Assembly: GCA_038496445.1 (NCBI GenBank)
Contig: JALMLS010000140.1
Span: 31,546-95,545, forward strand
Direction: 5' to 3'
DNA from: Trichosphaerium sp. ATCC 40318
Lineage: Eukaryota; Protista; Tubulinea
Length of the DNA stretch: 64,000 bases
Positions within the stretch are counted from its first letter, which is position 1. Each line of letters starts with the position of its first letter. Both the position numbers and the translations under genes were made by a program. The notes beneath the pieces were generated by a model. The model worked only from the letters and a program-made list of their open reading frames with translations. It did not search any database and was not told the origin of the DNA. This document shows, in pieces, positions 1 to 28,157 of this stretch.

Positions 1-2426
1 TACACGAATTTCTTTCAAACGCTATCAATACCTTGTGTAAATGCGATTCTATCACTTTTACCACCTAAAGACCTTATATGCTTTTCTTCGCTTTCAATAA
101 AATGCAAACAACACGTTGATGTCAATTTCGGGTGGCAAGAGTACTTAAAAAACCAAGTAGAAGATCTAAAGCGACTTTCACATCAAAATAAGGTTCCTCT
201 CCCTTTTGTACCAAAACATGTCCATAACAAGCGCGACCTTGCTGTATATATGCACGCTAAGCAGTACTTACAATATCAAAGTGAAGCAACCAATAGTTTG
301 AACGAAACACTTGCTGCTATCGACTTATTTTCGAACTGTTCGAATACATCTGACCGGTGGATACTCTTGGGACTAAACCAACTTGCAACTGAAGCAAAGA
401 TATCTAACATAGTCCCTGGATTCCTTGAGTTTGCACGTGATATTACTATAGCATTGTTATCTATGTACTTTCTCTATAGACACTTCTGTACAGTGCACTG
501 ACTTACTTAGGATGCTGCTCAATGCATTGGAACATCAACAATCAACAGATAAACAGAACTTAGTTGTTCAAGGATCATCTGTGGAGCATGGATACACTCG
601 ACTTTGTCAACAATATCCATCACAGTATCCGTTAGTAGATTTATCAGGATGGGAACCTTCCAATGGTAGTTTGGAAAGTGCAATAACAAGATTGAGTATC
701 CTCAAAGCCAAGGACATTAATCTTGATGAATACAATTCACTTGCGAAATCTTACATTGTATGTGAAATGCAGTATTTCACCTTTGTTTACAAAGTTTAGG
801 ATTACGGAGTCAATCTTCCCAAAGGATTTCACTTGTTAGCACTTCTATCAGATGTTGATGATTTGGGTTACAGCATCTCATTGAGTGCATTGAAACGTGT
901 CAACACTCTCATGTGTAATGTGATTCTGAATATATTCAAACTGGCTGTTTCTGTTGCTGAGAGTAGTGGATCGAAGCAAGTGAGCAAAGGTAATCTTGAA
1001 TTTGTTTGGGTTGTGATGCAAGGACACAAACGAGGCAATCCTCGAAATACCATTGTTAAATTCCAACCAACGGTTGATCAACAAATGGAAAGACTCGTGT
1101 ACTTGTACCTTTTGTTTCCCTTACTCTGACACTTTTTTAGATCCAATGAGATTGATGTTGAAGAGAAGTACTTGGAGGGTGTTGACATATCTTTGTGTGA
1201 CATTATAATCATCATATTCTCTCATGTGACACCTATAGCCAAAGTGCAAGCTGCAAAATATGCACTAGGCAGTAATTGCAAGTAAGTGAATTTATCAAAA
1301 TCCATTAAACTTACGCTTTAATATCAGGTACTTGAAGAACCAATTCACAAGATTCAGCAATGAACAAAACATCTATCAACTTGTTTTATTGGAAGGTGAA
1401 ACACTTGAGTCTCTTCTCATGGTCCTTGAGTACCTCTCAACATCTTCTCTTGACAAAATCAAAGCTCTTACATGTGTTGAGACAATAAGTAGTGTACTTA
1501 TTCGCTTGGGTCATGTACAGAACTAGTAACGAAATCGTTTACTTATCTATTTATAGTTTGTAAAAGAGGACGCTCAGGAACAAGTTGTTCTTGGTTGTAA
1601 AGTGGATTCTTTAAACTCTATTTCAATTTGCCAATATCTACTACCATCTGTTGTAGAGCGTACACCAATTATTGATTTTATTATAAAGAAGCTACACTAT
1701 TTAAAGAATTTAATATCAGTGGCTGATGGTCCAGTATCTCTTCCTCGTAATGTATTTAATATAGTTGAGGCACAACCAAAAAGAATTGATCTGAAACCAT
1801 GTGACTTATGGCTCATTGCACGTATGTATTTTCGCACTTGTAGGGCTTTGGTTACAACTAACCTGTATTTGCTTTTATAGATGCTTCATCTCTACCTGAT
1901 TTAGGACGTAAATATGCATCACAACTGCCAAGATACTTTGCACAGTACTTGTTGACATGTTACAAACCTGAAGATTTGTACTGGCATGAAAGATGGGGTC
2001 CATTTGTATCCATCGAGACTTTACGTTCTGAATCTAGGTTACATGCTGAAGCATGCAAAGCTGGCTTTGAGGCGTCAACTAGACAATACCATATTGAAGA
2101 AAAATGTGGTGAAGTGTACCTTGAAGGCTTCATATTGTACGCCTTTGTCTAGGCTAAACTAGTACTTTTTTTAACACATGCGCAGAAGATACAAGCTTGA
2201 AGGCAATGACTCTTTTTTGACATACAGTGAAGACTTAGCCTCAAGGAATGTGTTATTCAACATTTTATACAGCTTTGATGGTTGTAACTACGTGAGTTTG
2301 GAATCAGGAAAAAAGACATCACAACGTTATTATACAACATTGTACATAAAACCGTAAGTCCGAGCATTTTTCGCAATACTCAAACAATGTAGTGTTGCAA
2401 TCAACGTCATAAAGCAAGAAATATGA
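1..2426 (+). CDS. F-box / tandem histone-fold / BTB protein, copy 1 (5'-truncated by window edge; about 7 introns)
   Basis: Spliced GT-AG exons give F-box (FFQTLSIPCVNAILSLLPPKDLICFSSLSIKCK), H4-like segment (GLNQLATEAKISNIVPGFLEFARDITIALLS), second fold (ISLSALKRVNTLMCNVILNIFKLAVSVAESSGSKQVSKGNLEFVW) and BTB (LCDIIIIFS...AAKYALGSNCKYLKNQF...ETLESLLMVLEYLST). Intron positions match three paralogs. The 3' end assumes a final intron (GTAAGT at 2354); otherwise the stop is at 2357. Confidence 0.85.
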
Positions 2427-2963
2427 TTGTAGTTCGGCTGGTTGCCCCAAACTTGGAGTTACTGCCAAACTTGCAACGATTACTACCTATTTTAAATACA
2501 AACTCTATAGTAATGACAGTATAAATAAGTATTTTACTGGCGTTTGATAAGTGAGAGGTAGTTGTTTAAGTGCGGTAGTATCGTAAAACAACATCAGCAG
2601 GTAGCAGTTCTATACAATGCCAGACTACGGTTCAAAAAGTTTTTGTGTTGAGTGAATGCTTCAATTGATTTATGTAATTTGTTGTACAAGAGATAACTCC
2701 AATTTAATAAATGGGTACGTGATCCAAGGGGATCGAAGCAGAGTGATACGTATTCTCTCCTCCAATCTGGTATTGTAGATCAACAAAAACACGTGAATCT
2801 AACAGTTTATAATAACCTACCCAAATTTTGTTCTCTAGTTAAATATGTTCACGTGCTTCTATCGTGCGGAAGATAAGTCATTACAGCGCATTAGGGATGG
2901 CGGCGATGTACCAAGCTAGATTCCAAAAGTCTTCGTGATTCAAAATTTCTACTGTTGAGCACA

Positions 2964-4496
2964 ATGGAGTCTGAGCCTATCGAAGAGATACAACCAAAAG
3001 GAGAGATGAAAGTGGTAGTGGTGACAGGCGCTACTGGCTTTATAGGAGGTCATATTGTTAAAAAACTTTTGGAAAAAGGCTATTCCGTTCGTGGAACAGT
3101 TAGAAACCCTGACAATAAGGAAAAAACTCAATTTCTATTGGATATAGCTTCAAAAGCCAAAGGAGATTTTAAGCTTTACAGTACACGCGGTTTAAAGTAA
3201 TACAACACGTTTTAATGCATATTTAGAGGCAAACTTGTTAGACGAAGGTTCATTTGAAGAAGCAGTTACAGGTGCCGATGCCGTTATTCATACAGCTTCC
3301 CCTGTTATAAATACTGCGCCTAACCCAGAAGAAACAATTGTAAACCCTGCGTACGACTCTGAAGATGTCCTTTTTTTCGTTTTTTTTTCTAATATGTACT
3401 AATTTGTATTTAGAATCAAGGGTACGTTAGCTGTTTTGAAAGCTTGTAAGAAAAGCGGAACGGTCAAAAAGGTAAAATAATGTACCTGTTTTGGTGTCAG
3501 CACGTGAAAAAACGAACCGTTATTTTACTGGTTTCTTTTGTATTTGTCGTGTATGTGATTGTCGCAGCATTAACCCTCTTGCGTAGGTTGTCATGACATC
3601 GTCCGTTGCAGCTATAGCAAACACTACCAAGGCACCTCATGGCACGCCTGCAACATTTACAGAAGAGGACTGGAACACAACATCAGAGATTTCGAGTGAA
3701 GTTCGTTTTTTTGGCAATACAATTTTTTGAACTAATTTTTGTTTCACTTAGCCATACCCAGTCAGCAAATCACGTGCGGAAAAAGCAGCTTGGGATTTCG
3801 TTAAAGACGAAGAGGGTCTGTCTCTTGTAACTATATGCCCTGCGCTTGTTATGGGACCCGTGCTCTCAAAAAACCCTGTTTGCGAAAGTATTGGTATTTT
3901 ACTTTCGTACGTATTTGCTAAAACTTGGAATTTTTTGTCTCTGTCTTATCTAAAGTCTGTTGGTTTTAAATTTTTCCAAGGTTGGTAAAGGGCTCCTTTC
4001 CAAGAGCTCCAGATCTACATTTTTGTCTGGTTGATGTAAGAGATGTTGCCGATGCACATATAGCTGCTATGGAGAGTGAGAAAGCTAATGGTATCGCTGC
4101 TTAAACGAATTACTTTATTAATCACGTGTACAGGTCAAAGATACATATGCACTCGAAAGCAGCTGTTCTCACTATTGGACGCATCTCTGCTAGTTCATAA
4201 AAACTTTGCAACGCTTCCAGTACCATTAAAACCTATGCCTAACTTTGTTATGTATCTTGTCGCCCTTGTAGACTCAAGGGTAACATGGAGCTGGCTAAGA
4301 AAAAGGCTAGGAGCGAAATACATATTCGATAATGCCAAAATCATTGAGTATGCTTTATTTTTATATTTCTCTATTGTACTTGACCAACATGGTTTATTTT
4401 AGGGAGCTTGGTATAAAATTCCGCGATGCTGAGAGTTCGCTGGTTGATACTGTTAATGCACTTGCTGAGCAAGGGCATATTGATAAAATTCAATAA
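2964..4496 (+). CDS. NAD-dependent epimerase/dehydratase (dihydroflavonol-reductase / aldehyde reductase II-like SDR)
   Basis: [14 protein letters not shown] Rossmann motif, [21 protein letters not shown] (YxxxK), [10 protein letters not shown]; canonical short introns restore frame. Confidence 0.92.
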
Positions 4497-4918
4497 AAAT
4501 CACGAAAGTTTTAAGAATGGTGTTAAACCGCGTTAGTTGAGACATAACTGACTTCAGTTCACATATGACAGTTGTGAAGTGAAGCTTTTGAGGAAAAATC
4601 ACGTGTTTTAAGATTAAAAGGGTCTTTTAGGTATTATGTTAACCTAACTTTTAAGGCCACTTAGTGAGTCGAGTTGTAATGAGTTGCTAGAAGGTTTCAA
4701 CTGTACACGATAAAAAAATCTCATTAGCAGATCACTAATCGTGCCTTTTGTGCCAACGCTTCAGCCATGATGTGACAACCTGGATCACTTCTGTGAACCT
4801 AATAGTGACGTCATATCAGATACAAACAAGACAGCAAAACAAAGACCCTACTTTTCACTTAAAAGCTAAAGTCCCAAGTTACCCTGACATTAAGCCCATA
4901 CCATACTACAAGGAAACC

Positions 4919-6835
4919 ATGCTTTGCGCAGCATCAGGAGCTAAAGGGGTCGTAAGCTTTACTACAAACATTGACAGAGGCCATTTACCTCCTGCGAGTA
5001 GCATAGCATACGAAGGGCTATATTATAACCATTATTTCAATGTTGGCGCTCAAGAAAAGGAAAAACCGTTTTCTCCTCGTTTTTTCAGCGCTATCACCAA
5101 GGATCCTATCAATGGTGCGTGTACAAACATATTTATGGTACTTTGTAACATTGCTCAACAGGTGAAACCGAAAAGTTTGTTTGTGTTGGACTGACTGGAA
5201 ACTTGGATGGTCCTGGTCTCTACGAGAACAAAGGACGTTGGCCTCTTGATGTTGTGGTCGTTATGGACATTAGTGGCTCCATGGGAAATATCTTCGGACC
5301 AAATTCAAAACGCAAGACAATAGTACGTCATACTTTAAGCCCAAGGCAGAACGACTGTACCGTGAACTAATCCCTTTTTTTTCTTGTTTTCTAATGTTCC
5401 GCTAATGTCCCTTCCGTTTAGATGCAAGTAGCAAATGAAAGTGTTGTTTCAATGTTGGATAACCTACGTGATGATGACTCTTTTGGGATGGTGTTGTTCG
5501 ATACAAATGCATCTACTTTACAAGAACTAAAAAGATGGAGCGATATTGACAAACAAAATCTATCCAAAAAGATATTGGATGTTAAAGAGCGAGGAGGCAC
5601 AACACTATCCAAAGGTAAGACTACATTCCTAGAACAACGTTTGTTCTTGGCTTTGAGCTTAAATAGTTAATAGGGTTCGAGGCGGGCTACAAGATGCTTC
5701 AAGGATCAAAACAAGAGAAACGTAGAGAAAGAAGATTGTTTTTCTTCACAGATATGTTGATATCGAAGGTACGTTAATTTTTGTTCTGATCTTAGCGTTT
5801 CTAGCTTCCTATTTTGTTTTTACAGATCTTTAGTATGAGTTTGATGCGGGGTTAAAATCTCAATTCCAAAAAGCAGCAGCAGAAGGGATTTACTCATCTT
5901 TTGTTGGCATGGGAATAGATTTCGATACTGATGCTGTTGAATGTATCTCATCAGTAAAAGGGTGTAACTACTTCTCCGTCAACACTCCAAAGGAGTTTTC
6001 AAAGTTAATGAAAGATGAGTTCGATTACATCACTACAATTGATGTCTTTGATGCGCAAATTAAATTGAGCAGCAATGTTGTTACTCCTGAATATGTTTAC
6101 GGTTCTCCAGGTAATTGTTGTTTATCTCATTACTTTCTTGTATGCTTAATCACGTGATAGGCAATGAAGTTCCAAAAGATGGTGTACTCTGTAAAATCAC
6201 AAGTTCAAGCCCTAGTTTGCTTGATCACGGTAGAACCAAAGGAGGTGTTATTGTTGTCAAGGTTTCATCAAAGTCGAAAGAAGCCAACATCTTTTCAGTT
6301 GAGTATGTTTCAGTTTTACTTGCTTCACGGATTTTATGTTATATTTTTTACCTCTGACTATTCCAAAGTACCTCGTACACAAGCAGGGAAGGTGAGAAAT
6401 ATCAGTTTTCAAATCAGGTTGAATTTCCTAAACCTACAGTAAGTTGTTTTCGTTTTACCAAATCATATTCATGTTTGGCTTATTGTTGCTTTGCTAGGAT
6501 ACTGATTATTTTGAAAATGCATGTATACGCAAGGCAGTATTGTTAACACGTTATGTTCGTTTTCTAAAGAGCTACTTAAATGCTGAAGGTCCGTTTGTTG
6601 TTGTTAACTTACGTAAACTTAACTGAATCTTTTAGATAAAAAAGGGTGGAACCAAAAATTTGATGTTTTTAAAAAGTATCTTGAAACTGAGGTACGACAA
6701 ACTGTAGTTTCAAAAAACAAACAAATACTCAAACTTTTAAAATTATAGATTGATGTACTGGAAGAAGATGAAGAGGCTCTCACAAAGGAGTTAGAAAACT
6801 TTGATAAAATTCATAAGCTTGCAATGAAACAATAA
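4919..6835 (+). CDS. von Willebrand factor A domain protein
   Basis: LDVVVVMDISGSMG (MIDAS DxSxS), GGTTLSKG, LFFFTD, SFVGMGIDFD, N-terminal YEGLYYNHYF. Start codon uncertain because the frame is open upstream to 4748. Confidence 0.85.
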
Positions 6836-8037
6836 GATTAAATTACTAATTGTTTTGTAAACCTTCACACATGACTCACAACTTCAAACTGCTTTTTTCT
6901 TCACAGTAGAAAACTGAAGTTTCTGGTGCGCCACTACAAAGCGCCTATCCTTAAAGCTTTCACTTCCAAAGTTGTTTAGAGCCGGGTTATGTTAAGCTCC
7001 GCTTTTAAAACAAAATTATTTGCACTCTTGAAAACGTTTTTATTGTTTGAAGCTTATTGGCTTTTTGTTTTAATCGGCGCTTTTGTACACCCACACTCCC
7101 TTTGCGCGTAATTAACGGCGTCCAGAGTATTGTTGCTCGATTTTAGAGAGCAAACCGCTTTTTCAGCCATTACCTGCTGTACAATGTATATAACTTCTGG
7201 TACCATCTAAGTGGAGCTTGTTATACGTATAGAGAGACTGAAGCATCATGAGCAAGTGCTCAAGGAGCATATGCTGATACTTTCCTGAAAAGGCAACAGT
7301 TCTTACTTTTTTAGTAAATAATTTTTTTCACGCTTACAACATAATTTTACGCTTTCACACTCCGTATCCACAAACGTACGTTTTAAAGCCGATAAGCATT
7401 ATGGAATGCTTACGTAATCTTCCTTTAGCTTACACCTCAATAATGTCAAAAAGAGATGAAAAGCTGAAGCTCAACAGTATCACCTCTAAGTGCAATCCAT
7501 TATGTATTTGCCATAACGGATTTTATATAATCTTTTTAGCGAGTTTCCTGCCTTATTTAAGCTACAAACGCTGAAAAAATCTGGCATATGGACTAAGCAC
7601 AGAAAACTCGCTACGTTGTTAGTTCGCTTTCTCAGATGAAGCTACTAAATTGGGATATCCCACTTTGTACTGCGTAACTAATAGAACACTTGCTATATTA
7701 CAATAGTGTGTACCTTGTGACCTAGGAGCAACGCAAATAAAGCGAATTGAATTGGTGTACAGGAATTGTTCGAAAGATGTGAAATGTGGCACAACTAATG
7801 CGACTAAATGGCTCTGTTCGCTTTTGGTTGGCCTGTTGGATCGCTCGGCATAATAACCCGACATTCGCTGACAAAAAGGATTGGACTAAGATTAAATAGG
7901 AGTACCCTATGCGCGTAGTAGTATAAAGCATCTAACATAATATCGCGGTATGTCCGGGTTAAGGAGAATTGTGATGTGATATCCCAAAAAGGTGTTGTTA
8001 CGGAGGTACGATTATTTCATAATTATCAACAATCAAC

Positions 8038-8445
8038 ATGCAAGCAACAACTCTAGTATTATTATCCGTAATTGTAATCATTTGCATCACGCAGGTAACA
8101 TGCAGACGTGAGAGATCTGAAGAAAGCGAATCAGTAAGTACTTTTAGTTTTTTTTGCTCTAGCTTTCAACACTAGTGTACCTTCACAGCAAACATAGGCT
8201 GCAAGGTTATTTGTTTCTCCGTACTTCGCTATTTTATACTACTGTTTGGTCGTCTTATAACTTCTAATGAATCATTATAGCTTTGGTCTTGTTGTGTTGA
8301 AGTAAAAGAGACATGTCACAGTGCCGGTTTTAAACACTGCGAAAGGTATTCAAATCAAGAGTATTGTATCAGTCATGTATTGGAACATTGCTACTATGAC
8401 GTATATAAGCCATGCCTTAAAGGAAATTATCCTACTTGTCAATAA
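8038..8445 (+). CDS. Small secreted cysteine-rich protein, 101 aa, 3 exons (8038-8133, 8176-8220, 8281-8445)
   Basis: Signal-peptide-like MQATTLVLLSVIVIICITQVTC; two phase-0 GT-AG introns give a stop-free frame with 11 Cys in the mature part. Absent from the ORF track. Confidence 0.75.
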
Positions 8446-8972
8446 ACATGCAACAACTTTACTACTTTTTAAGGCATTTTTAAGCTAATCACTAAACAAT
8501 AGTTCACTGGCAGCGAATTTGCCATCGTGAGTTTTTTTTTAACTGCATAAGCTAAGTTATGACATGTGCTAGTGTTAGCAAAAGTGGCGAAGTGGTAGTC
8601 CACTATAAAAACGACAATAACAACTGTCTTGTTTTTTCTCCAACGTATCACGTGATTTAGTTTTTTAAGCCCAACGCTGTTAGAACCCTCTACAAGCCCT
8701 GCTACTAACAATGATTCGTTTTTTGACTTTTCAATAAAAAAGTAGTTCGCTGCTTAATAACGCATAGTCTGTCATTTAAGTTTGCTAAACTTTGCAACTT
8801 TATTACTGTTTGTGAGTTTTGGTTTCCTTGTTTAGTCAGATTGACAGATCTGCTACAAGCTCTGTTAGTTCTTACAGAACTGACAATTTTGAAATGTGAA
8901 CCACGTTTTTGGAGGATTGCTGGGCGGGAAATTAGCCCACTAAGTAATTGTTTAAAACAAAATAGCATTACC

Positions 8973-11491
8973 ATGAACAAGCGCCGCAATAACAGTACGC
9001 TTGCGTCGCACCTAAAAGTACCAAAATAAACGCCATTAAATAGATGTATTCACGAACTTCTCCCAAATGTTGTCAGTACCTTGTTTAAATGCTGTTCTGT
9101 TATATTTACCGCCTAAAGACCTCATTTGCTACTCTTCACTATCAACAAAGTGTAAACAACACGTCGACATCAGTTTTGATTGGAACGAGTACTTACACAA
9201 TCAAATTGAGAATTTAAAGCGTCTATCACGTGACAAGAAGATACATCTACCTATTCTCCCAAAACGAGCGTATACTAAGCATGATCTCGTTCTATTCACG
9301 ATAACCAAGCGCTATTTATTGCGCCAAAGCGAAGCGAGTGCATTGCTGAACAAAGCGATAGCGTACCAGGATTCTTTCTCAAACTGTTTGAATACTCCTG
9401 ATATCTGGATGCACGTGGGGCTACGACAACTTTCAGCTAAAGCCAAGATTACACTTGCACTTCTTGGATTCTATAAATACGCACGTGACATAACTGTTAT
9501 GGTATTATCTACGTACATTATAAACTATTCTTGAACTGAGTTAGCTAACATCTTTGTTTATTAGGATACTGCTCAATGCATTGGAACAACAATCAACAGA
9601 TAAACAGAACTTAGTTGTTCAAGAGTCATCTGTGATTGATGCGTATAAACAGCTTTCTCAAGAGCATCCATCATGTTATCCACCTTCGCCCTCAGGTGAT
9701 GTCTTGAAACCCTCCAATAATAAGTTACCTGCCATAACAAGATTGAGTCTCCTCAAAGCCAAGGATATCAACGCTAAAGAATATAATTCATTTGGGAAAT
9801 CTCATGTCCGTAAAATACGTACTCAACATTATTTACAAGGTTTTAGGACGACAAAGAACCAGTTAATCTGACCAAAGGATTTCACTTGTTAGCACTTCTA
9901 TCAGATGTTGATGATTTGGGTTACAGCATCTCATTGAGCGCATTGAAACGTGTCAACACTCTCATGTGTAATGTGATTCTGAATATATTCAAACTGGCTC
10001 TCTCCGTTGCTGAGAGTAGTGGATCGAAGCAAGTGAGCAAAGGCAATCTTAAATTTGTTTGGGTTGTGATGCAAGGACACAAACGAGGCAATCCTTGAAA
10101 TACCATTGTTAAATTCCAACCAACGGTTGATCAACAAATGGAACAAATAATGTACTGTTACACTTTTATGGCTAGAAATGTACAAACAGTTTTGTGTAGT
10201 TGGGTGATGTTGATGTTGAACAGAAGTACTTGGAGGGTGTTGACAAATATTTGTGTCCTGTTACGATCATCATATTCTCTGACGTGACGCCAATAGCCAA
10301 AGTTAGGCTACCAAAGTACTTGGTAGGAGCTAAATGCGAGTATGTCCCCTCTTTTACATCTATACTGAACTTTAATATTGAGCAATAGATACTTGAAGAA
10401 CCAATTCACAAGATTCAGTAATGAACAGGACATCTATCAACTTGTTTTATTGGAAGGTGAAACACTTGAGTCTCTTCTCTTAGTACTTGAGTACCTCTCA
10501 ACATCTTCTCTTGACAAAATCAAAGCTCTTACATGTGTTGAGACAATAAGTAGTGTACTTATTCGCTTGGGTCATGTACAGAACTAGTAACGAAATCGTT
10601 TACTTATCTATTTATAGTTTGTAAAAGAGGATGCTCAGGAACAAGTCATTCTTGGTTGTAAAGTGAATTCTTTAAACTCTATTTCAATTTGCCAATATCT
10701 ACTACCATCTGTTGTAGCACGTACATCAATCATTGATTTCATTATAAAGGAGATAGACAACCAGTTCATATCAGTGACTGACGGCCCAATATCACTTCCT
10801 CGTAATGTATTTCATATTGTAGAGGCAAAATCAGAAGAATTCTATCTGAAACCATGTGACTTGTGGCTCATTGCTCGTATGTATTTTAATGCTATCAAGA
10901 TTTCCAATTAACTTCGCTAACTTGCATTTATAGATGCTTCGTGTCTACCTGATTTAGCACGTAAATATGCATCACAACTGCCAAAATACTTTGCACAGCA
11001 CTTGTTGACATGTTACAAACCTGAAGACTTGTACTGGCATGAAAGATGGGGTCCAATTGTATCTATCGAGACTTTACGTTCTGAATCAAGTCTGTATTCA
11101 GAATCATACTATAACGAACGGCATATAACAGGAGAAGTGGAAGTAGTTGGTGACAGTGGTGAAATTTATCTTGAAGGCTTCATACTGTACGGCAATCTTC
11201 ATAATAGTTTGTTTATTTTTGTGCAGAGAATATGTATTGTATTCTGGACGTTTGAGATTGTCAGAAGAGTTGAGAAAAAGAAACGTGGTCTTTGATGCCT
11301 TATACAGCTTTAATCAATTTAGTAACTTTTATGTGACTATAAGCTCAGGCAACGTAAGTCGCTACGATGGAGATAACACTATTTATATTCGGCCGTAAGT
11401 TTTAAAGTAGTTCTTGAGCATCACACAATGCCATAACAAAGTAACGTTACCTAACTTCTCTAGTATTACTGAAGGTGATGATACCAATTAA
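8973..11491 (+). pseudogene. F-box / histone-fold / BTB protein, copy 2 (probably disrupted)
   Basis: Collinear with copies 1, 3 and 4 but has TGA at 10096-10098 where paralogs have CGA (Arg). The next acceptor (tag|ttgggt, about 10199) is one base short relative to copy 3 (cag|gtcaggt), predicting a frameshift. Confidence 0.75.
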
Positions 11492-11600
11492 GCGCTCATT
11501 ACAATAAATATAGCACGTGCACATGCTCAGAAAACAAAAAAATGTAACAACTGTAACACCTAAAAAGACACTTTGAAATCTATTTTGTTATCATGTTTTA

Positions 11601-14123
11601 TTAGCATATCATGTTATTGGTTATTTTGTATTTCATTGCAATAGTGAGAACATTCTTTGTCACAACAAAAATTGTAGTAGGCTCTCCGTTAGACATCTTT
11701 TGCATATTTCCTGTTGTATTTGTGTTTTGTAGTCTATCACAAGCATACCAAATAGAATGTAAACCATAAAAAGGTAAATTGCAAGTTAAACTTGCTTTGC
11801 TTTGGTCATTTGTATATTTGTACTTACTAAATAAAGTAAGTAGAGAAAATAGTTATGTTGAAAAAAACACGTGCAATATTAAGCCACCATAGTATACTTC
11901 TCCAGAATCATTATTGGTTAGGAATTCAGCTTTATAAATGAATTGCCTCTCAGTGAGTTCTTGCGTTGTATAGATTTTTGTTTCAGAACGTATAGTATCA
12001 ATGGATACAATTGGACCCCATCTTTCATGCCAGTACAAGTCTTCAGGTTTGGAACATCCCATCAAGTACTGTGTAAAGTATTGTGGAAGCTTTGATGCGC
12101 ATTTACGTGCTAAATCAGGAAGAGATGAAGCATCTATAAATACAAGTTAGCATGATGAAGCAGGTTAATGAAATACTTACGAGCAATGAGCCACAAGTCA
12201 CAAGGATTCAGTCCAATTGTTTTCTCCGTAGGTTCAGAGTTAAAAAAACCTTTGTAGTACTGTTTAGTCATCAATTCTTCCAACATTTTAAAAAACTCAG
12301 GATTCACAAGTGCTGGTCCTTCGTTTGCTGATACTAGTTCAGAAACATTGTATAGGGTACATAGTAATATTTCATGAGTAGATTTTTGGTTTGGTAACAT
12401 ATATTGAATCATTGAAATTGTCTTCGGGGTGTATTCTATGCAGCTATGAAAAACGTGGTTCTGACCAGTCATATCAGCAAACTGTTTGAACATTAGATAA
12501 AACATCTTTGGCAATAGTTCGCACATGTCCAAAACGAATCATCATACCGGTTTTTGTTTCAGCAGATGTATCATTGAATAATCTACTATTACAAGATGCT
12601 ACGTAGTACTCAAGAACTAAGAGAAGAGACTCAAGTGTTTCGCCTTCCAATAAAACAAGTTGATAGATGTCCTGTTCATTACTGAATCTTGTGAATTGGT
12701 TCTTCAGGTACCTGTTCCATTAATAAGCTCAGTAACATGATAATTTAATGTACGTACTTGCAATTACTTCCCAACGAGTATTTAGCTCCTCTAACTTTGG
12801 CTATGGGTGTCTCATCAGAGAATATGATGATTGTAACATCACACAGAGATATGTCAACACCCTCCAAGTACTTCTCTTCAACATCAATATCACCTGACCT
12901 GCACAAAACTGTTTGTACATTACTAGCCGTAAAAGCATAACGTACATTATTCGTTCCATTTGTTGATCAAGTGTTGGTTGGAATTTAACAATGGTATTTC
13001 GAGGATTGCCTCGTTTGTGTCCTTGCATCACAACCCAAACAAATTCAAGATTGCCTTTGCTCACTTGCTTCGATCCACTACTCTCAGCAACAGAAACAGC
13101 CAGTGTGAATATATTCAGAATCACATTACACATGAGAGTGTTGACACATTCCAATGCACTCAATGAGATGCTGTAACTCAAATTTCCAACTGCTGATAGA
13201 AGTGCTAACAAGTGAAACTTCTGAACTACCTGTAAGTGTTCTGTTTTAAGTACTTTAAACTAATATACACACCTTTGCAGATTCTATTTGGTCGAGAGAA
13301 TTATATTCTTTAGCATTGATGTCCTTGTCTTTGAGGAGACTCAATCTTGTTATGGCAGGTAACTTATTGGTGGGTTTCGAGATATCACCTGAGGGCGAAG
13401 GTGGATAACATGATGGATGCTCTTGAGCAAGCTGCTTATACGCATCAATCACAGATGACTCTTGAACAACTAAGTTCTGTTTATCTGTTGATTGTTGATG
13501 TTCCAATGCATTGAGCAGTATCCTATAATAAAGTCAGCTATACAAATTTTACGGGAATCAATAAATAGTAATAACGTACACAGAAAGTACTGTAACAGTA
13601 ATATCACGTGCGTATTCAAAGAACCCTGGAAGAGTATGTTCAATACCAACGTCTCGCGCGATGTTATAGAGGCCCATATTTATCCAACGTTCCGCTGTTG
13701 TTGTGCAATTCAAGAACAAGTTATGTTTCGCCAGTGCTTCGTTTAAGTGTGCTGTCGCTTTTGATTTGTACTTTATGTATCGCTTCACGTGTACGAAGAG
13801 AGCGAGATCACCTTTGTTATAGACTCCTTTAGGCAATAGGGGAGGAATTATGTTGATTTTGCTTGAATTAGCGAGAATAGCGTCTCTTTGCTTCTCAAAG
13901 TACTTCTGCCACGTAAAATTGGCGTCAACGCGTTGTTTGCACTCTGTTGACAACGACGAAAAGCAAATAAGGTCCTCAGGTGGTAGGTGTGATAGAATCG
14001 CATTCAGACATTGCGGGGACAGCGTTTGGAAGAAATTTGTGGAAATATCGACCCAATTAGCGTCTAATACGATGTTATCCAAATAATACGACTGTTTATT
14101 GTACTTGGGCGCCTCTTGTTCAT
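11601..14123 (-). CDS. F-box / histone-fold / BTB protein, copy 3 (last intron GC-AG)
   Basis: MNKRRPNANWVDISTNFFQTLSPQCL...; H4-like GLYNIARDVGIEHTLPGFFEYARDITVTVLS; same intron positions as paralogs; the junctions I checked restore an open frame to TAA at 11601. Confidence 0.85.
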
Positions 14124-14466
14124 CGTATATTTGGTATTATTTAATGCCAAAGAAACTGACTTAATTGCAGCCTTATCCGCTTTGGGAGCTTCGTATTGTC
14201 CCCAAAAAAACAATATTGGTATGATATCGAAACGACACCAACAATTGAACACGTGTGCAAAGAAAATTGACACTCTTTTGGGAATGATATTTTTTAGGCA
14301 CTTTTATTAATTTTAACAAAGCTGTGTCCAAACATTTGTTTATGCATTGAACACTGGACAAAGATTAATACTAGCAATTGTACTTTACCTGACTACATCT
14401 AACAAGGAATCAAGTTTTTGCAATAGTCAACAAGTTTAATCCAACTTTTCAAAAAGTCAGTCTGGC

Positions 14467-17090
14467 TTAAAACCAGGAACTGCTCTCTTTTTCATAACCC
14501 TTCTTGTTGGGAATACTACAGTTGCTTATTAGTATGTTAAATTGTACATCCATATGTTGAAAGTGTTTAAAAACGAAAATGAAAAATCGGTAGCATAAGT
14601 TTAAAAAAAAAACATCAAAAAGTGTACTACTCTACTTACTGTTTGATATAAAGTATACTCTTATCACAACCCCTTGAAAGGCTAATTGCTTCACACGAGT
14701 ATATTGTCTCATATTCTTTATCATCTAAGCTGTACTTCAAGTTAAACAGCACATTTCTTTTTAGTAGTTCATCAACAAATGATACAGAACAACGACAATA
14801 ATCAACCTTGTAGCTTCTAAAATAGGTGAGGTTAGCGGTATAGAAACCGATGGGCCGCACAGTATAAATCCTTCAAAGTACACTTCACCTGAATGAGTAC
14901 CCGGCTCATACTCTCCCAAAGCGCACTGTTTTGTAGGTGTGTTGATTTTTTGTGAGCAAGCTTCTCCATACAAACTTGATTCAGAACGTAAAGTATCAAT
15001 GGATACAATTGGACCCCATCTTTCATGCCAGTACAAGTCTTCAGGTTTGTAACATGTCAACAAGTACTGTGCAAAGTATTTTGGAAGCTGTGATGCATAT
15101 TTACGTGCTGAATCAGGAAGAGATGAAGCTTCTATAAATAAAGTTAATTGGAATCTTTAGTACAAACAGTGCAAAATACATACGAGCAACAAGCCATAAG
15201 TCACATGGTTCTAGTCCTATTGTTTCCTGGTTTTCTTCAAGAATATTGAATATCTTACGAGGAAGTGACATTGGACCATTAGTCAATGATATCAATTTCT
15301 TTAATGAGCCAATCCATTTCAAAATTTTACTGCTGATTGGTTCTCGTTCCACAACTGACGGCAATAGATAATGACATAAAGATATTGAACTACGAATATT
15401 CCAGATACAACTGCAAAATATTTTTTCTTGACCATCCTCGCAAACAAACTGCGAACTTATTAATGTTAAATGCTGCTAAATGGTTTGTACCTGACCCAAG
15501 CGAATAAGTACACCACTTATTGCTTTAAAAGAATTTAGCTTTTTGATTTTGTCAAGAGAAGAGGTTGAGAGGTACTCAAGAACTATGAGAAGAGACTCAA
15601 GTGTTTCACCTTCCAATAAAACAAGTTGATAGATGTTTTTGTCATTCTTGAACTTGGTGAATTGAGTCTTCAAGTACCTGGTTGTAAGATTAAGTTTGCT
15701 ATTGTATAGTGAGGTACGTACTCGCAATTAGTTCCTAATGCATATTTTGATCCTCTCACTTTCAGTACAGGCTCTGTTTTGTGGAATATGACAAAGGTAA
15801 TATCACATAAAGATGAATCTCCGTTTGTCAAGTATTTCTGTTCAACATCAATGTCTCCTGCTCTAATAAGCGTATCAATATAAAGACATGGATTAATTTA
15901 GACTTGTACATGAGTCTTTCCATTTGTTGATCAAGTGTTGGTTGGAATTTAACAATGGTATTTCGAGGATTGCCTCGTTTGTGTCCTTGCATCACAACCC
16001 AAACAAATTCAAGATTACCTTTGCTCACTTGCTTCGATCCACTACTCTCAGCAACAGAAAGAGCCAGTGTGAATATATTCAGAATCACATTACACATGAG
16101 AGTGTTGACACGTTTCAACGCATTCAATGAGATACTGTAACCCAAATCATCAACCTCTGATAGAAGCGCTATCGGATGAAATACTTTGGGACTTTTAATC
16201 TGTGTACGCTGGTAAAGAAATTAACAATGGTTACAGTACCTAGCAACGTACGTTTAGTGATTTTGAGATAGATTTGTACTCGTTGGCATCAATGTTCACG
16301 TCTCCCAGTAGACTCACTCGGGTTACTGAAGTTTCCAAAATACTTGACTTTTTTTTGGGTGGATCTGAGGGCGAAGGTGGGTAACGTGTTGGATACTCTT
16401 TAGCAAGTTGATCGTATATGTCAATCACAGATGGCTCTTGGATAACCGTGTTTGATTTATTTGTCGATTGTTGACGTTTCAACGCATTCAGCAGTATACT
16501 TGATACAACAGTTAATCTTAAAAAAAATCTAAAAAAACTTACACAGATAGCACTGTCACGGTCATGTCACGTGCGTATTCAAAGAATCCTGCAAGTGTAA
16601 ATGTAATCTTAGCTTGAGTCGCAAGTTGCTGAAGCCCCAAGTGCATCCAGAAATCGGGTGTAGTTGAGCAATTCGAAAACAAATCTTGACATGATAATGT
16701 TTTGTTCAAACTTTTTGTCGCTTCGCTCTGATGTATTAAATAACGCTTCGTATGTTCGAATAGAGCGAGATCGCGCTTGTTGTAGACTTGTTTTGGTACA
16801 AAAGGAAGAGAAACTTTCTTTTCCCTTGATAGGCGTTTTAACTCATCTCCCCGGCATCTTATATACTCGTGCCACTTGAAATTAGCGTCAACGCGTTGTT
16901 TATATTTCGTTGAGACCGAAGAGAAGCATATGAGGTCTTTAGGCGGTAAATGTGATAGAATTGCGTTTAAACAGTGTGTTGGTAGCGTCTGGAAGAAGCA
17001 TGTGCAAATACTTACCCAATTCGCGTCTATCAGCAGACTATGTTAGCACAACCTATGGTATTAAAGCGTACTTGGGTTCCTCTTATACAT
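14467..17090 (-). CDS. F-box / histone-fold / BTB protein, copy 4
   Basis: MYKRNPNANWVSICTCFFQTLPTHCLNAILSHLPPKDL...; same domain order and introns. The 3' end assumes a final intron; otherwise the stop is at 14636. Confidence 0.85.
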
Positions 17091-26274: not shown

Positions 26275-27861
26275 CTATTTCGAAAGTTTCTTAGTATTTT
26301 TTCGTTTTAAGTACCTTTTCTTATAGTTGTCTATGAAACTCATCATTTTAAAATCAATAGGTTGTTTGTCACCATCTATAAGCGTGATAACAGATGTTTC
26401 TTTGTTGACTCTATAAACAGTCTTACTTGTAATCAAAAGTTCTTTATCAAAAAGCCAAAAACCTTTCTCTTTTGCACCATCAGGAAATGAAACAATACCT
26501 TCTTCAAATACCGTTCCATGACTCCACTCACCAATCCATTTCACACCAGATAATTCATTCTCATTTTCAGCATTACAAAAATACAACTCTCCTTTACCAT
26601 GTCTAAGATCATGCCTATACTCGCCAACATATTTTGTTCCATTTTTCCATATTGTTTCACCAACACCACTTCTTCTATTAATTATAAAATCACCAATGTA
26701 TTTTCTACCATCAGGCCATATAAAAGTACCCTTTCCTTGAATGTTTTCTAACTTAAAGTTTCCTCTGTAAAACTTACCGTCAGGCCATGACATTTCACCA
26801 AAACCAGATATCCAATCATTCTCAAACTCACCAATGTATTTCTTACCATCAACCCAACACTTCTCTCCATTACCATGTCTTTTACCATTCTTAAAGTCAC
26901 CTTTATAAATAGTACCACTTGCTGTAACATATGTTCCTTTGCCATGTTGTATACCGGCCACGAAGTCACCTATATACTCAGTACCATCAAGCCAACACTT
27001 CTCTCCATTACCATGTATTTTACCATTCTTAAAGTCTCCTTTATAAATAGTGCCACTTTTTGAAACATACGTTCCTTTACCTTCTTTGTTACCGTTTTTA
27101 AACTGGCCAATATACCTGGATCCACTAACCCAACACTGCTCTCCATTACCGTGGCTTTTACCATTCTTAAAGTCTCCTTTATAAATAGTACCGCTGGGAG
27201 TAACATATGTTCCTTTACCTTCTCGTATACCGGCCACAAAGTCACCTACATACTCAGTACCATCGTGCCATAACTGCCTACCATTTCCTTCTAAGCGTCC
27301 ACTAATAAAATTACCATAGTACTTTGTTCCATCTTTTAAATAACATTTACCTTTCCCAGTCATCCTGCCTTTATAAAAATCACCGATATAAACCTTACCA
27401 TTAACCCATTCTTGTTTTCCTGTACCATGCTTCTTACCTCTAACAAAGTCACCGACATATACACTTCCATTAGCACCAAATAAAGTCCCTCTGCCTGTAA
27501 TTTTATTGTTTTTAAACTCTCCAACATACTTTGATCCGTCAGGCCAAGTTTGCTCTCCTTTGCCATTTTTTTTATCATTTTCATAGTCTCCACTATAAAC
27601 TATACCTTGAGGCCAATAAAAATGGCTTCCTTTGCCATGACGTTTGTTATCTTTAAACTCTCCAATATACTTTGTGCCATTTGGAAACGTTACTTCTCCT
27701 TTTCCTGTAATGTTATCTTTATAGAACTCACCAATATACTCTTTCCCATCTGGCCAAGAATATTCTCCATTACCATGGCGCTTACCTCTTCTCAATTCTC
27801 CGGTATACTTAGAACCATCACGGTACGTTTTTGTTCCTGTTTTTATTTTCTTTTGCTTCAT
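26275..27861 (-). CDS. MORN-repeat protein, intronless (528 aa from first ATG)
   Basis: About 19 tandem 23-aa repeats YxGxFxxGxxxGxGxxxxxxG in one uninterrupted ORF. Confidence 0.95.
   Translation of the reverse strand: MKQKKIKTGTKTYRDGSKYTGELRRGKRHGNGEYSWPDGKEYIGEFYKDNITGKGEVTFPNGTKYIGEFKDNKRHGKGSHFYWPQGIVYSGDYENDKKNGKGEQTWPDGSKYVGEFKNNKITGRGTLFGANGSVYVGDFVRGKKHGTGKQEWVNGKVYIGDFYKGRMTGKGKCYLKDGTKYYGNFISGRLEGNGRQLWHDGTEYVGDFVAGIREGKGTYVTPSGTIYKGDFKNGKSHGNGEQCWVSGSRYIGQFKNGNKEGKGTYVSKSGTIYKGDFKNGKIHGNGEKCWLDGTEYIGDFVAGIQHGKGTYVTASGTIYKGDFKNGKRHGNGEKCWVDGKKYIGEFENDWISGFGEMSWPDGKFYRGNFKLENIQGKGTFIWPDGRKYIGDFIINRRSGVGETIWKNGTKYVGEYRHDLRHGKGELYFCNAENENELSGVKWIGEWSHGTVFEEGIVSFPDGAKEKGFWLFDKELLITSKTVYRVNKETSVITLIDGDKQPIDFKMMSFIDNYKKRYLKRKNTKKLSK
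26850..27265 (-). repeat. Near-identical ~138-nt internal tandem units in the MORN gene
   Basis: caacac(t/tg)ctctccattacc...ttaccattcttaaagtc..ctttataaatagt recurs at about 26855, 26993 and 27131. Confidence 0.85.
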
Positions 27862-28157
27862 TCTTTGCACGTGACAAATAAAAAAATACGTGTTTGGCAA
27901 CGATTGTTATCCGGGTTGTTTGCGAACGTTTTAGCGAGTCGATAACGTATTTTGTTTAACAACGAACTCAAAATATGCTAGACTAGCGTTATAATTATTG
28001 AAGGGTAAAATTGGCTTCTTATACAGCCACTACGGTTTATACCCACTATTTGTTTAAGTCACCCTTGGTTTTTCATGAAACACCCAATACTGCTCACAAT
28101 ACTGCGAACTCAAGCAATGAACAGTCAACGTCACAGGTCTTGGCTTTATAAACTCAC

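What the first reader, a model, noticed from the sequence alone, without database searches (positions are those of the whole stretch)
1..17090. Expanded family of F-box / histone-fold doublet / BTB proteins: candidate new ubiquitin-ligase adaptor system with built-in histone mimic
Seen: four paralogs (1-2426 +, 8973-11491 +, 11601-14123 -, 14467-17090 -) share domain order and intron positions. After the F-box, NIARDVGIEHTLPGFFEYARDITVTVLS..LLNALEHQQSTDKQNLVVQESSVIDAYKQ aligns with only a short L2 insertion to histone H4 ([57 protein letters not shown]). After a linker, ISLSALKRVNTLMCNVILNIFKLAVSVAESSGSKQVSKGNLEFVW aligns without gaps to both H3 ([45 protein letters not shown]) and H2B ([45 protein letters not shown]). 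A BTB domain follows. Known: F-boxes bind Skp1/CUL1, BTBs bind CUL3, fused H4-H3 doublets are characteristic of Marseilleviridae and other giant viruses, and animal ABTB2/BTBD11 combine histone folds with BTB but no F-box. I do not know this three-part architecture from any described family. Inference: the basic DNA-contacting residues (H4 RR/KR, H3 KR) are largely lost, so the doublet may be a protein bait that captures histones, histone chaperones or viral histones for ubiquitination by two cullin systems. An anti-giant-virus or chromatin quality-control role is possible but untested.
Basis: partly seen in the sequence, partly recalled or inferred. Interest (0 to 1): 0.92.

Follow-up and report, generated by a model that had tools for sequence, protein, structure and literature searches.

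The report
F-box, histone-fold, BTB gene cluster
Four neighbouring copies (one of them dead) of a protist gene encode a probable ubiquitin-ligase adaptor that joins an F-box, at least one histone-like fold and a BTB domain; the combination is unusual, but the claimed histone "doublet" could not be verified.

Summary
The four paralogs are real and share nine exons and the same 41-59 nt GT-AG introns. C (14123-11601, minus strand) and D (17090-14636, minus strand) are intact. A is cut at its 5' end by the window edge. B is a pseudogene, with a TGA at 10096-10098 and a frame break at the exon 4/5 junction.

- **F-box:** solid (Pfam E 4e-9, above the curated cut-off).
- **BTB:** supported. Exon 6 looks like BTB families by protein-language-model features (0.94). 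The spliced family profile matches Pfam-verified BTBs at z about 6.
- **Second helical segment (HF2, exon 4):** probably a histone fold of the archaeal/NF-Y type, on several weak but concordant lines. It is not specifically H3- or H2B-like.
- **First segment (HF1):** no detectable histone signal. It is split by an intron, so it could not be handed to Pfam, the Atlas or AlphaFold.

HF2's near-identity between copies reflects gene conversion, not exceptional constraint. No relative turned up in 1.84 billion proteins (HF2 exon) or in viral and metagenome contigs (the exons scanned).

Best reading: a lineage-specific, birth-and-death family of SCF substrate receptors with a histone-fold plus BTB interaction/oligomerisation core. 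The scan has unchecked notes of the same architecture, and of F-box/histone-fold/ankyrin genes, elsewhere in this genome.

The parts
1..2357 (+). Paralog A, 5'-truncated by the window edge; 8 exons seen (1-464, 511-757, 800-1098, 1141-1281, 1328-1514, 1557-1821, 1881-2136, 2186-2357), open to its stop
   Evidence: Splice modelling
8973..11398 (+). Paralog B, pseudogene: in-frame TGA at 10096-10098 (CGA in the other copies). The exon 4/5 junction (intron about 10152-10199) cannot be spliced in frame
11601..14123 (-). Paralog C, intact, 718 aa, 9 exons (14123-14105, 14063-13580, 13522-13273, 13229-12946, 12898-12758, 12711-12525, 12481-12181, 12133-11869, 11826-11601). Its last exon is unrelated to that of A, B and D
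14636..17090 (-). Paralog D, intact, 697 aa, 9 exons (17090-17072, 17026-16543, 16498-16252, 16208-15910, 15862-15722, 15677-15491, 15448-15184, 15131-14861, 14816-14636)
16872..16988 (-). F-box of D. Equivalent regions: C about 13909-14034, A about 10-129, B about 9058-9177
   Evidence: Pfam PF00646 E 4.2e-9 and PF12937 E 4.1e-6; C E 2.5e-5
13417..13698 (-). HF1 candidate of C, split by intron 2 (13579-13523). Equivalents: A 346-616, B 9394-9667, D 16393-16661. Acidic (pI 4.9-6.6). Histone fold NOT verified
   Evidence: No signal (45 of 200 shuffles reach its score); coordinates; pI
13002..13220 (-). HF2 of C (exon 4), a probable histone fold: alpha1, L1 'YSIS', long alpha2, L2 'SGSKQV', alpha3. 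Equivalents: A 824-1042, B 9877-10095, D 15966-16184
   Evidence: Atlas features 0.92 with 171-177 shared features, all top families in the histone-fold clan. The only two PDB hits at E<=10 are archaeal histone A, E 0.21, in register. hhalign against 80 archaeal histones scores 19.8 vs shuffles 9.2 +/- 2.1, 0 of 200. Pfam TAF13 E 0.055 in C only. AlphaFold of the exon alone: alpha1/strand/alpha2 at pLDDT 60-73, alpha3 not reproduced
12525..12849 (-). BTB domain core of C, spread over exons 5-6 and running on into exon 7. Equivalents: A 1190-1514, B 10248-10575, D 15491-15813
   Evidence: Atlas features on exon 6: BTB families at 0.94. hhalign of the spliced family against Pfam-verified BTBs: score 28.1 vs 12.3 +/- 2.5, 0 of 150
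14636..15448 (-). C-terminal about 240 aa of D (exons 7-9) with no recognised domain. It holds a conserved block (KPEDLYWHERWGP, exon 8) flanked by fast-diverging exons 7 and 9
   Evidence: Pfam empty; divergence per exon; alignment

Best explanation
The locus is a tandem, birth-and-death family of substrate-receptor subunits for SCF (Skp1-Cullin1) ubiquitin ligases, in a probable amoebozoan genome. The taxon rests only on unchecked scan notes.

Each intact protein has four parts in order:
1. An N-terminal F-box that docks on Skp1.
2. A helical region of about 200 aa whose second half (HF2) is a degenerate histone fold.
3. A BTB domain directly after HF2.
4. A poorly conserved C-terminal region of about 240 aa that most likely picks the target.

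I infer that HF2 plus BTB act as a protein-protein interaction and oligomerisation core. A histone fold cannot stand alone. It must pair either with the upstream helical segment HF1 inside the same chain, or with the HF2 of a second chain brought close by BTB dimerisation. The result would be a dimeric SCF receptor, as in other dimeric F-box proteins.

DNA binding is unlikely. The L1 arginine and two of the three L2 'RKT' residues of archaeal histones are replaced (YSIS and SKQ).

What is shown: the gene structures, the F-box, BTB-like and histone-fold-like sequence signals, purifying selection, gene conversion, and one dead copy. What is inferred: Skp1 binding, dimerisation, the partner of HF2, and the role of the C-terminus.
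For: - Gene models with conserved splice sites and open frames in A, C and D.
- F-box above Pfam's curated cut-off in C and D.
- BTB.
- HF2 as a histone fold. Across the whole 715-column family alignment, HF2 is the single best local match to the archaeal histone profile, and it aligns in structural register.
- Purifying selection on exon 2: dN/dS 0.13-0.20.
- Fast divergence of exons 7 and 9, and a different terminal exon in C.
- One pseudogene, which is typical of birth-and-death F-box and BTB families (PMC4209131).
- A histone fold next to a BTB exists in animal ABTB2 proteins, and the non-DNA-binding double histone fold of Sos serves intramolecular contacts (PMC13088155).
Against: - No single histone-fold test is significant on its own. 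Pfam gives 14 bits against a cut-off of 27. The PDB hits have E 0.21.
- AlphaFold on the isolated exon is poor (pLDDT 60) and draws the proposed alpha3 as a beta hairpin. Foldseek then finds nothing.
- BTB is not called by Pfam on the exon pieces.
- No transcript evidence: no RNA run was listed.
- No orthologue outside this genome, so conservation cannot be judged beyond the paralogs.
- The HF2 core is homogenised by gene conversion, which removes it as evidence of constraint.
- Whether the BTB binds CUL3 was not tested.
Confidence: 0.6

Rival explanations
1. This is a true double histone fold. HF1 and HF2 pair inside one chain into a histone pseudodimer. The module is evolutionarily related to the ABTB2-type double-histone-fold + BTB proteins of animals, with an F-box added.
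For: - A histone fold needs a partner, and HF1 lies about 55 residues upstream.
- By eye, HF1 has helix and loop lengths compatible with the fold.
- The second half of HF1, at the start of exon 3, is almost invariant among the copies.
- Animal ABTB2 joins a double histone fold to a BTB.
- Unchecked scan notes report F-box/histone-fold/ankyrin genes in the same genome. Together with this family they would cover all the ABTB2 partner domains.
Against: - HF1 gives no signal against 80 archaeal histones: score 10.8 vs shuffles 9.5 +/- 2.0, with 45 of 200 shuffles reaching it.
- No signal against an H3 profile, against PDB sequences, or in language-model features on its first half.
- HF1 and HF2 are not detectably similar to each other.
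- The H4 alignment is not above chance in the stated register.
- No ankyrin repeats are present, and a full HMMER search retrieved no ABTB2.
- All of these tests have low power, because there are only four sequences and HF1 is split by an intron.
Confidence: 0.25
2. There is no histone fold at all. The region between the F-box and the BTB is an ordinary helical linker, as follows the F-box in many SCF receptors, and the histone-like pattern in HF2 is a chance resemblance of an amphipathic helix-loop-helix.
For: - Every individual histone-fold score is sub-threshold.
- AlphaFold and Foldseek on the exon give no histone match.
- According to the tool's own calibration, a third of shuffled proteins also get ten same-clan top hits in the Atlas.
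Against: - Independent methods converge on the same fold in the same register.
- The Atlas score is 0.92 with 171-177 shared features, the range the tool gives for true family members.
- In an unbiased scan of 177,635 PDB sequences, the only two hits are archaeal histones.
- The targeted profile test beats all 200 shuffles.
- The match covers L1, alpha2, L2 and the start of alpha3 without gaps.
Confidence: 0.12
3. The protein is a dual-cullin bridge or a histone decoy. The F-box recruits SCF while the BTB recruits CUL3. The histone-like module captures histones, histone chaperones or giant-virus histones for ubiquitination.
For: Only the co-occurrence of F-box and BTB in one chain and the loss of canonical DNA-contact residues in HF2 (alignment; pI values).
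Against: - Many BTB domains only oligomerise, and the CUL3-binding determinants were not tested.
- No similarity to viral histones or to any viral protein was found.
- There is no expression or infection data.
- HF2 does not resemble H3 or H2B specifically.
Confidence: 0.08

Closest known systems
ABTB2 / BTBD11 (Cca3) type proteins of animals: double histone fold + ankyrin repeats + BTB
   Same: A histone-fold module and a BTB domain lie in one non-histone polypeptide. The histone fold is presumed to be an interaction module rather than a chromatin component (PMC13088155).
   Different: This family has an N-terminal F-box, which ABTB2 lacks. It has no ankyrin repeats. Only one of the two folds is detectable here, and the histone fold abuts the BTB directly. 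No sequence relationship was retrievable. The ABTB2 type is reported from animals only.
Canonical F-box substrate receptors of SCF ligases (F-box + linker + target-binding domain; several are dimeric)
   Same: An N-terminal F-box above the Pfam threshold, followed by a helical region and a variable C-terminal part. The genes form a tandem, birth-and-death family with pseudogenes.
   Different: The downstream domains are a histone-fold-like module and a BTB, not WD40, LRR or Kelch. A survey of ubiquitin-system domain networks found that F-box and BTB share few partner domains (PMC4327156).
BTB adaptors of CUL3 ligases (BTB-BACK-Kelch, MATH-BTB)
   Same: A BTB core recognisable at profile level against Pfam-verified BTB-Kelch proteins.
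   Different: No BACK, Kelch or MATH domain was found. An F-box is present. CUL3 binding was not tested.
Archaeal histones / NF-Y-type (CBFD_NFYB_HMF) histone folds
   Same: This is the best sequence and feature match of HF2. The L1-alpha2-L2-alpha3 register and the 'A..SG.K.V' L2 pattern agree.
   Different: Identity is about 20%. The L1 arginine and most of the 'RKT' motif are lost. The module is embedded in a 700-aa multidomain protein. Pfam membership is not reached.
Histone doublets of Marseilleviridae and other Nucleocytoviricota
   Same: Only the idea of two histone folds in one chain.
   Different: No sequence relative of exons 2, 4 or 8 was found in 2.9 million viral contigs. HF2 is unlike an H3 profile built from giant-virus-associated contigs. 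The doublets themselves were not retrieved for comparison.
Histone (H) domain of Sos
   Same: A histone-fold module without DNA-binding electrostatics, used for protein contacts in a signalling protein.
   Different: The protein context is unrelated (a Ras exchange factor).

Membership tests
F-box (Pfam PF00646 / PF12937) | Sequence match above Pfam's curated gathering score | tested here: met
   D: 36.4 bits (cut-off 20.5), E 4.2e-9; PF12937 26.9 bits (cut-off 24.3). C: 24.5 bits, E 2.5e-5
F-box (SCF substrate receptor) | Binding to Skp1 | not testable with these tools
   Needs co-folding or pull-down with the organism's Skp1
BTB/POZ (Pfam PF00651) | Sequence match above Pfam's gathering score | tested here: inconclusive
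   The domain is split over three exons. Single exons give no Pfam hit.
BTB/POZ (Pfam PF00651) | Profile-level similarity to verified BTB domains | tested here: met
   hhalign against BTBs verified by Pfam (E 1e-16 to 1e-25): score 28.1, shuffles 12.3 +/- 2.5, 0 of 150. Atlas features on exon 6: BTB at 0.94, though only 155 shared features
CUL3 adaptor BTB | CUL3-binding surface (loop motif and 3-box helices after the BTB) | not tested
   No reliable alignment of the second half of the BTB and what follows could be made from four sequences
Histone fold (Pfam clan CL0012), segment HF2 | Sequence match to a histone-fold family above the curated threshold | tested here: not met
   Best hit is PF02269 TAF13 at 14 bits against a cut-off of 27, in copy C only
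Histone fold (Pfam clan CL0012), segment HF2 | alpha1-L1-alpha2-L2-alpha3 pattern aligned in register with known histone folds | tested here: inconclusive
   For: (z about 5, 0 of 200 shuffles). Against: AlphaFold of the lone exon has pLDDT 60 with alpha3 drawn as a hairpin, and Foldseek is empty
Histone fold, segment HF1 | Any profile, feature or structure match to a histone fold | tested here: inconclusive
   No signal. All tests had low power, and the segment is interrupted by intron 2, so the whole fold could not be submitted
Double histone fold, ABTB2 type | Two histone folds in one chain forming an intramolecular pseudodimer | not testable with these tools
   Requires a model of the spliced protein. 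Both AlphaFold jobs had to be run on single exons
Double histone fold, ABTB2 type | Ankyrin repeats between the histone folds and the BTB | tested here: not met
   No ankyrin match on any exon. HF2 ends about 35 residues before the BTB
Nucleocytoviricota histone doublets | Sequence relationship to viral histones | tested here: not met
   Viral-contig scans with exons 2, 4 and 8 are empty. No similarity to the H3 profile

The most novel reading that the evidence does not exclude
HF1 and HF2 form a genuine intramolecular histone pseudodimer wedged between an F-box and a BTB. That would be a new eukaryotic double-histone-fold family outside animals, and the first inside a cullin-RING ligase adaptor. 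It may share ancestry with the ABTB2-type module, and it may be used to dock on histones or their chaperones, or to bridge SCF and CUL3 ligases.
Probability: 0.2. Interest if true: 0.75.

Novelty: new variant of a known kind. Interest (0 to 1): 0.45.

Why it matters
[quoted passage not shown] A family that joins both, with a histone fold between them, would be a new way of building such an adaptor. It would also extend the short list of histone folds recruited for non-chromatin work, so far Sos, ABTB2, SPT3 and the TAFs.

If the doublet is real, it would move the ABTB2-type association of histone fold and BTB out of animals. As it stands, the architecture is only partly verified. The family is confined to one unannotated genome, and no function is indicated. 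The finding is therefore of moderate interest.

Tried and rejected
1. A full HMMER search of 1.84 billion representative proteins with the HF2-exon profile gave 0 hits. No full-length database protein could therefore stand in for the spliced gene.
2. An RNA-seq look-up for the C+D stretch listed no run.
3. AlphaFold on exon 4 alone (pLDDT 60) and on exon 2 alone (pLDDT 44) was too poor to judge.
4. Pfam on every exon of C, D and A found only the F-box and one weak TAF13 hit.
5. Atlas features on the first half of HF1 showed nothing histone-like.
6. PDB profile searches with exons 2 and 3 found nothing relevant.
7. hhalign of HF1 against HF2 showed no internal-repeat signal.
9. An H3 profile built from 24 sequences fetched from viral contigs matched neither segment.
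10. Scans of viral contigs (three) and metagenome contigs (two) with exons 2, 4 and 8 found no relatives.
11. Giving the spliced 700-aa proteins, or the spliced HF1, to Pfam, the Atlas or AlphaFold was left out. This is the main gap in the work.
12. Literature searches for F-box + BTB fusions and for histone fold + BTBD11 found no description of this architecture. The Chlamydiae F-box/BTB-box expansions are described there as F-box or BTB-box proteins, with no F-box-BTB fusion mentioned in the passages read.

Full report
**What is there.** The window is AT-rich eukaryotic DNA (GC 35-39%) with very short introns. I anchored conserved peptides in the six-frame translation and listed every GT-AG intron that joins them in frame. 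This gave one consistent nine-exon model for all four copies.

- Copy C (14123-11601, minus strand) encodes 718 aa.
- Copy D (17090-14636, minus strand) encodes 697 aa.
- Copy A (1-2357, plus strand) is open to its stop but starts inside the F-box, because the window begins there.
- Copy B (8973 to about 11398, plus strand) is dead. The CGA arginine codon of the other copies is TGA at 10096-10098, and no GT-AG intron can join exon 4 to exon 5 in frame because one base is missing at the junction.

Intron positions and phases coincide in all copies, and intron lengths are 41-59 nt. tblastn with the D protein finds nothing else in the remaining 47 kb.

**Are the genes alive?** In exon 2 (F-box plus the first part of the helical region) synonymous divergence is near saturation (dS 1.2-2.6) while dN is 0.23-0.34. 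That gives dN/dS of 0.13-0.20, which means purifying selection on A, C and D. No RNA run could be listed for the locus, so expression and splicing are unconfirmed.

**F-box.** Pfam PF00646 matches D at E 4.2e-9 (36 bits, cut-off 20.5) and C at E 2.5e-5. PF12937 also passes in D. This part of the finding is solid.

**BTB.** The domain is spread over exons 5-7, and no single exon reaches Pfam. Two other lines support it.
- The 62-aa exon 6 has language-model features whose nearest clusters are almost all BTB families (0.94; 155 shared features, somewhat below the tool's 170 mark).
- I fetched eleven BTB-Kelch genes from viral contigs with a degenerate motif and checked three of them with Pfam (BTB E 5e-16 to 3e-25). 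I then compared their BTB alignment with the spliced family alignment using hhalign. The best local match in the whole 715-column family alignment is the expected place, around 'LCDVTIIIF...KYLKNQF' (score 28.5). For that region alone the score is 28.1, against 12.3 +/- 2.5 for 150 column shuffles, and none of them reaches it.

I accept the BTB. Whether it binds CUL3 was not tested.

**HF2 (exon 4).** Four lines of evidence point the same way, and none is strong alone.
1. Atlas features give scores of 0.92-0.87. All listed families belong to the histone-fold clan (CBFD_NFYB_HMF, Histone, TAF, CENP-S), and 171-177 features are shared, which is the range the tool reports for true family members.
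2. A profile of the four copies was searched against all 177,635 distinct PDB sequences at E<=10. It returned exactly two hits, both 'archaeal histone A' (E 0.21). They align without gaps from the L1 'RVS' (here 'SIS') through alpha2 and the L2 'SGRKTV' (here 'SGSKQV') into alpha3.
3. I fetched 120 loci carrying the archaeal-histone L2 motif and built an alignment of 80 distinct histones from them. The best local hhalign match of the whole family alignment is again HF2 in that register. For HF2 alone the score is 19.8, against 9.2 +/- 2.1 for 200 column shuffles (maximum 15.8). Lines 2 and 3 measure the same signal and are not independent of each other.
4. Pfam gives a weak TAF13 match in copy C only (E 0.055).

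AlphaFold on the isolated exon is poor (pLDDT 60). It does draw alpha1, a short strand at L1 and a long alpha2, but it turns the proposed alpha3 and the following 20 residues into a beta hairpin. Foldseek on that model finds nothing. A lone histone fold without its partner, modelled from a four-row alignment, is a hard case, so I give this little weight either way. My estimate that HF2 is a histone fold is about 0.75.

HF2 is not specifically H3- or H2B-like. An H3 profile built from 24 fetched sequences does not match HF2 (score 6.7). The same H3 profile recognises the archaeal histone profile at E 2e-5, which serves as a positive control.

**HF1.** This segment is interrupted by intron 2 in all copies, in the middle of the proposed alpha2. 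It could therefore not be given to Pfam, the Atlas or AlphaFold as one piece, and spliced sequences have no reference.
- The two halves give nothing on their own.
- The spliced four-copy alignment, tested locally, shows no similarity to the archaeal histone profile: score 10.8, with 45 of 200 shuffles reaching it.
- It shows no similarity to the H3 profile or to HF2.
For copy C, whose alignment was printed, the optimal alignment pairs HF1's first helix with the end of H4's alpha2, which is not the proposed register. The D alignment was not printed.
- AlphaFold on exon 2 was uninformative (pLDDT 44).

The doublet is thus unverified. These tests have low power, so it is not refuted either. The argument that a histone fold needs a partner is real. 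That partner could equally be the HF2 of a second chain held by the BTB dimer.

**Conservation of HF2 is gene conversion.** The 225-nt HF2 core is 92-97% identical at the nucleotide level among all four copies, including the pseudogene. Exon 2 is only 62-71% identical. The few differences in the HF2 core are not concentrated at third codon positions. For exon 4, dS is 0.13-0.27 and dN/dS is 0.5-0.7. Other exons show pair-specific patches: exon 5 is closest between A and C, and exon 6 between A and D. This agrees with the scan's separate note on this stretch. The near-identity of HF2 is therefore not evidence of unusual functional constraint.

**Charge.** HF1 is acidic (pI 4.9-6.6). HF2 is mildly basic (pI 8.1-9.7), and the 80 archaeal histones have a median pI of 9.2. 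In the HF2 alignment the L1 arginine and two of the three 'RKT' residues are replaced.

**Relatives.** The HF2 profile found nothing among 1.84 billion representative proteins. Exons 2, 4 and 8 found nothing in viral contigs, and exons 2 and 8 found nothing in JGI metagenome contigs. There is no sign of a giant-virus connection. The organism's own proteome is evidently not in these collections. Scan notes call the genome a probable amoebozoan (unchecked). They also record the same architecture on another piece of the genome, and several F-box/histone-fold/ankyrin genes (unchecked).

**Literature.** A 2026 review of double histone folds lists ABTB2-type proteins (double histone fold + ankyrin + BTB) as animal-only and without a solved structure. 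It notes that the Sos double fold has lost its DNA-binding electrostatics and serves protein contacts (PMC13088155). A survey of ubiquitin-system domain networks found that F-box and BTB share few partner domains (PMC4327156). Two text searches for F-box-BTB fusions or histone-fold ligase adaptors returned no description of this architecture.

**Verdict.** The best reading is a lineage-specific, rapidly turning-over family of SCF substrate receptors whose body contains a degenerate histone fold next to a BTB. That pair probably forms an interaction and oligomerisation core, followed by a variable C-terminal region that would select targets. The doublet, the H4/H3 identities, dual-cullin recruitment, histone baiting and an antiviral role remain untested ideas. 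The decisive step is a structure model or HHpred run on the spliced proteins, which could not be done here for want of a reference for spliced sequences.

Noticed in passing
window 851-1075, 9904-10128, 12969-13193, 15933-16157: The HF2 core is 92-97% identical in DNA among all four copies, including the pseudogene, while exon 2 is 62-71% identical. This indicates patchwork gene conversion. Exons 5 and 6 show different pair-specific patches.
   Followed up: yes
window 11601-11826 (minus strand): The terminal exon of copy C is unrelated to that of A, B and D (16-25% identity). Exon 7 of C carries a 15-aa insertion. C may have acquired a new 3' end, and this gene-model end is the least certain.
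   Followed up: partly
window 2955-4500 (plus strand): Between copies A and B lies an intron-containing gene for an NAD-dependent epimerase/dehydratase-type (Rossmann) protein (Pfam Epimerase E 5e-8 on the first exon).
   Followed up: partly
window 4748-6450 (plus strand): A second intervening gene has a weak von Willebrand factor type A match (E 0.005 on one exon).
   Followed up: no
window 26275-27900 (minus strand): An intronless 541-aa ORF holds 14 MORN repeats (Pfam E 5e-82). It coincides with the strongest GC skew in the window (-0.35).
   Followed up: partly
This may be the 'H3-like' stretch that other notes report in F-box/ankyrin genes of this genome.
   Followed up: no
window 1-64000: ARAGORN found no tRNA genes. 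Introns in the family are uniformly 41-59 nt, with GTA-rich donors (GTACGT, GTAAGT, GTATGT).
   Followed up: partly
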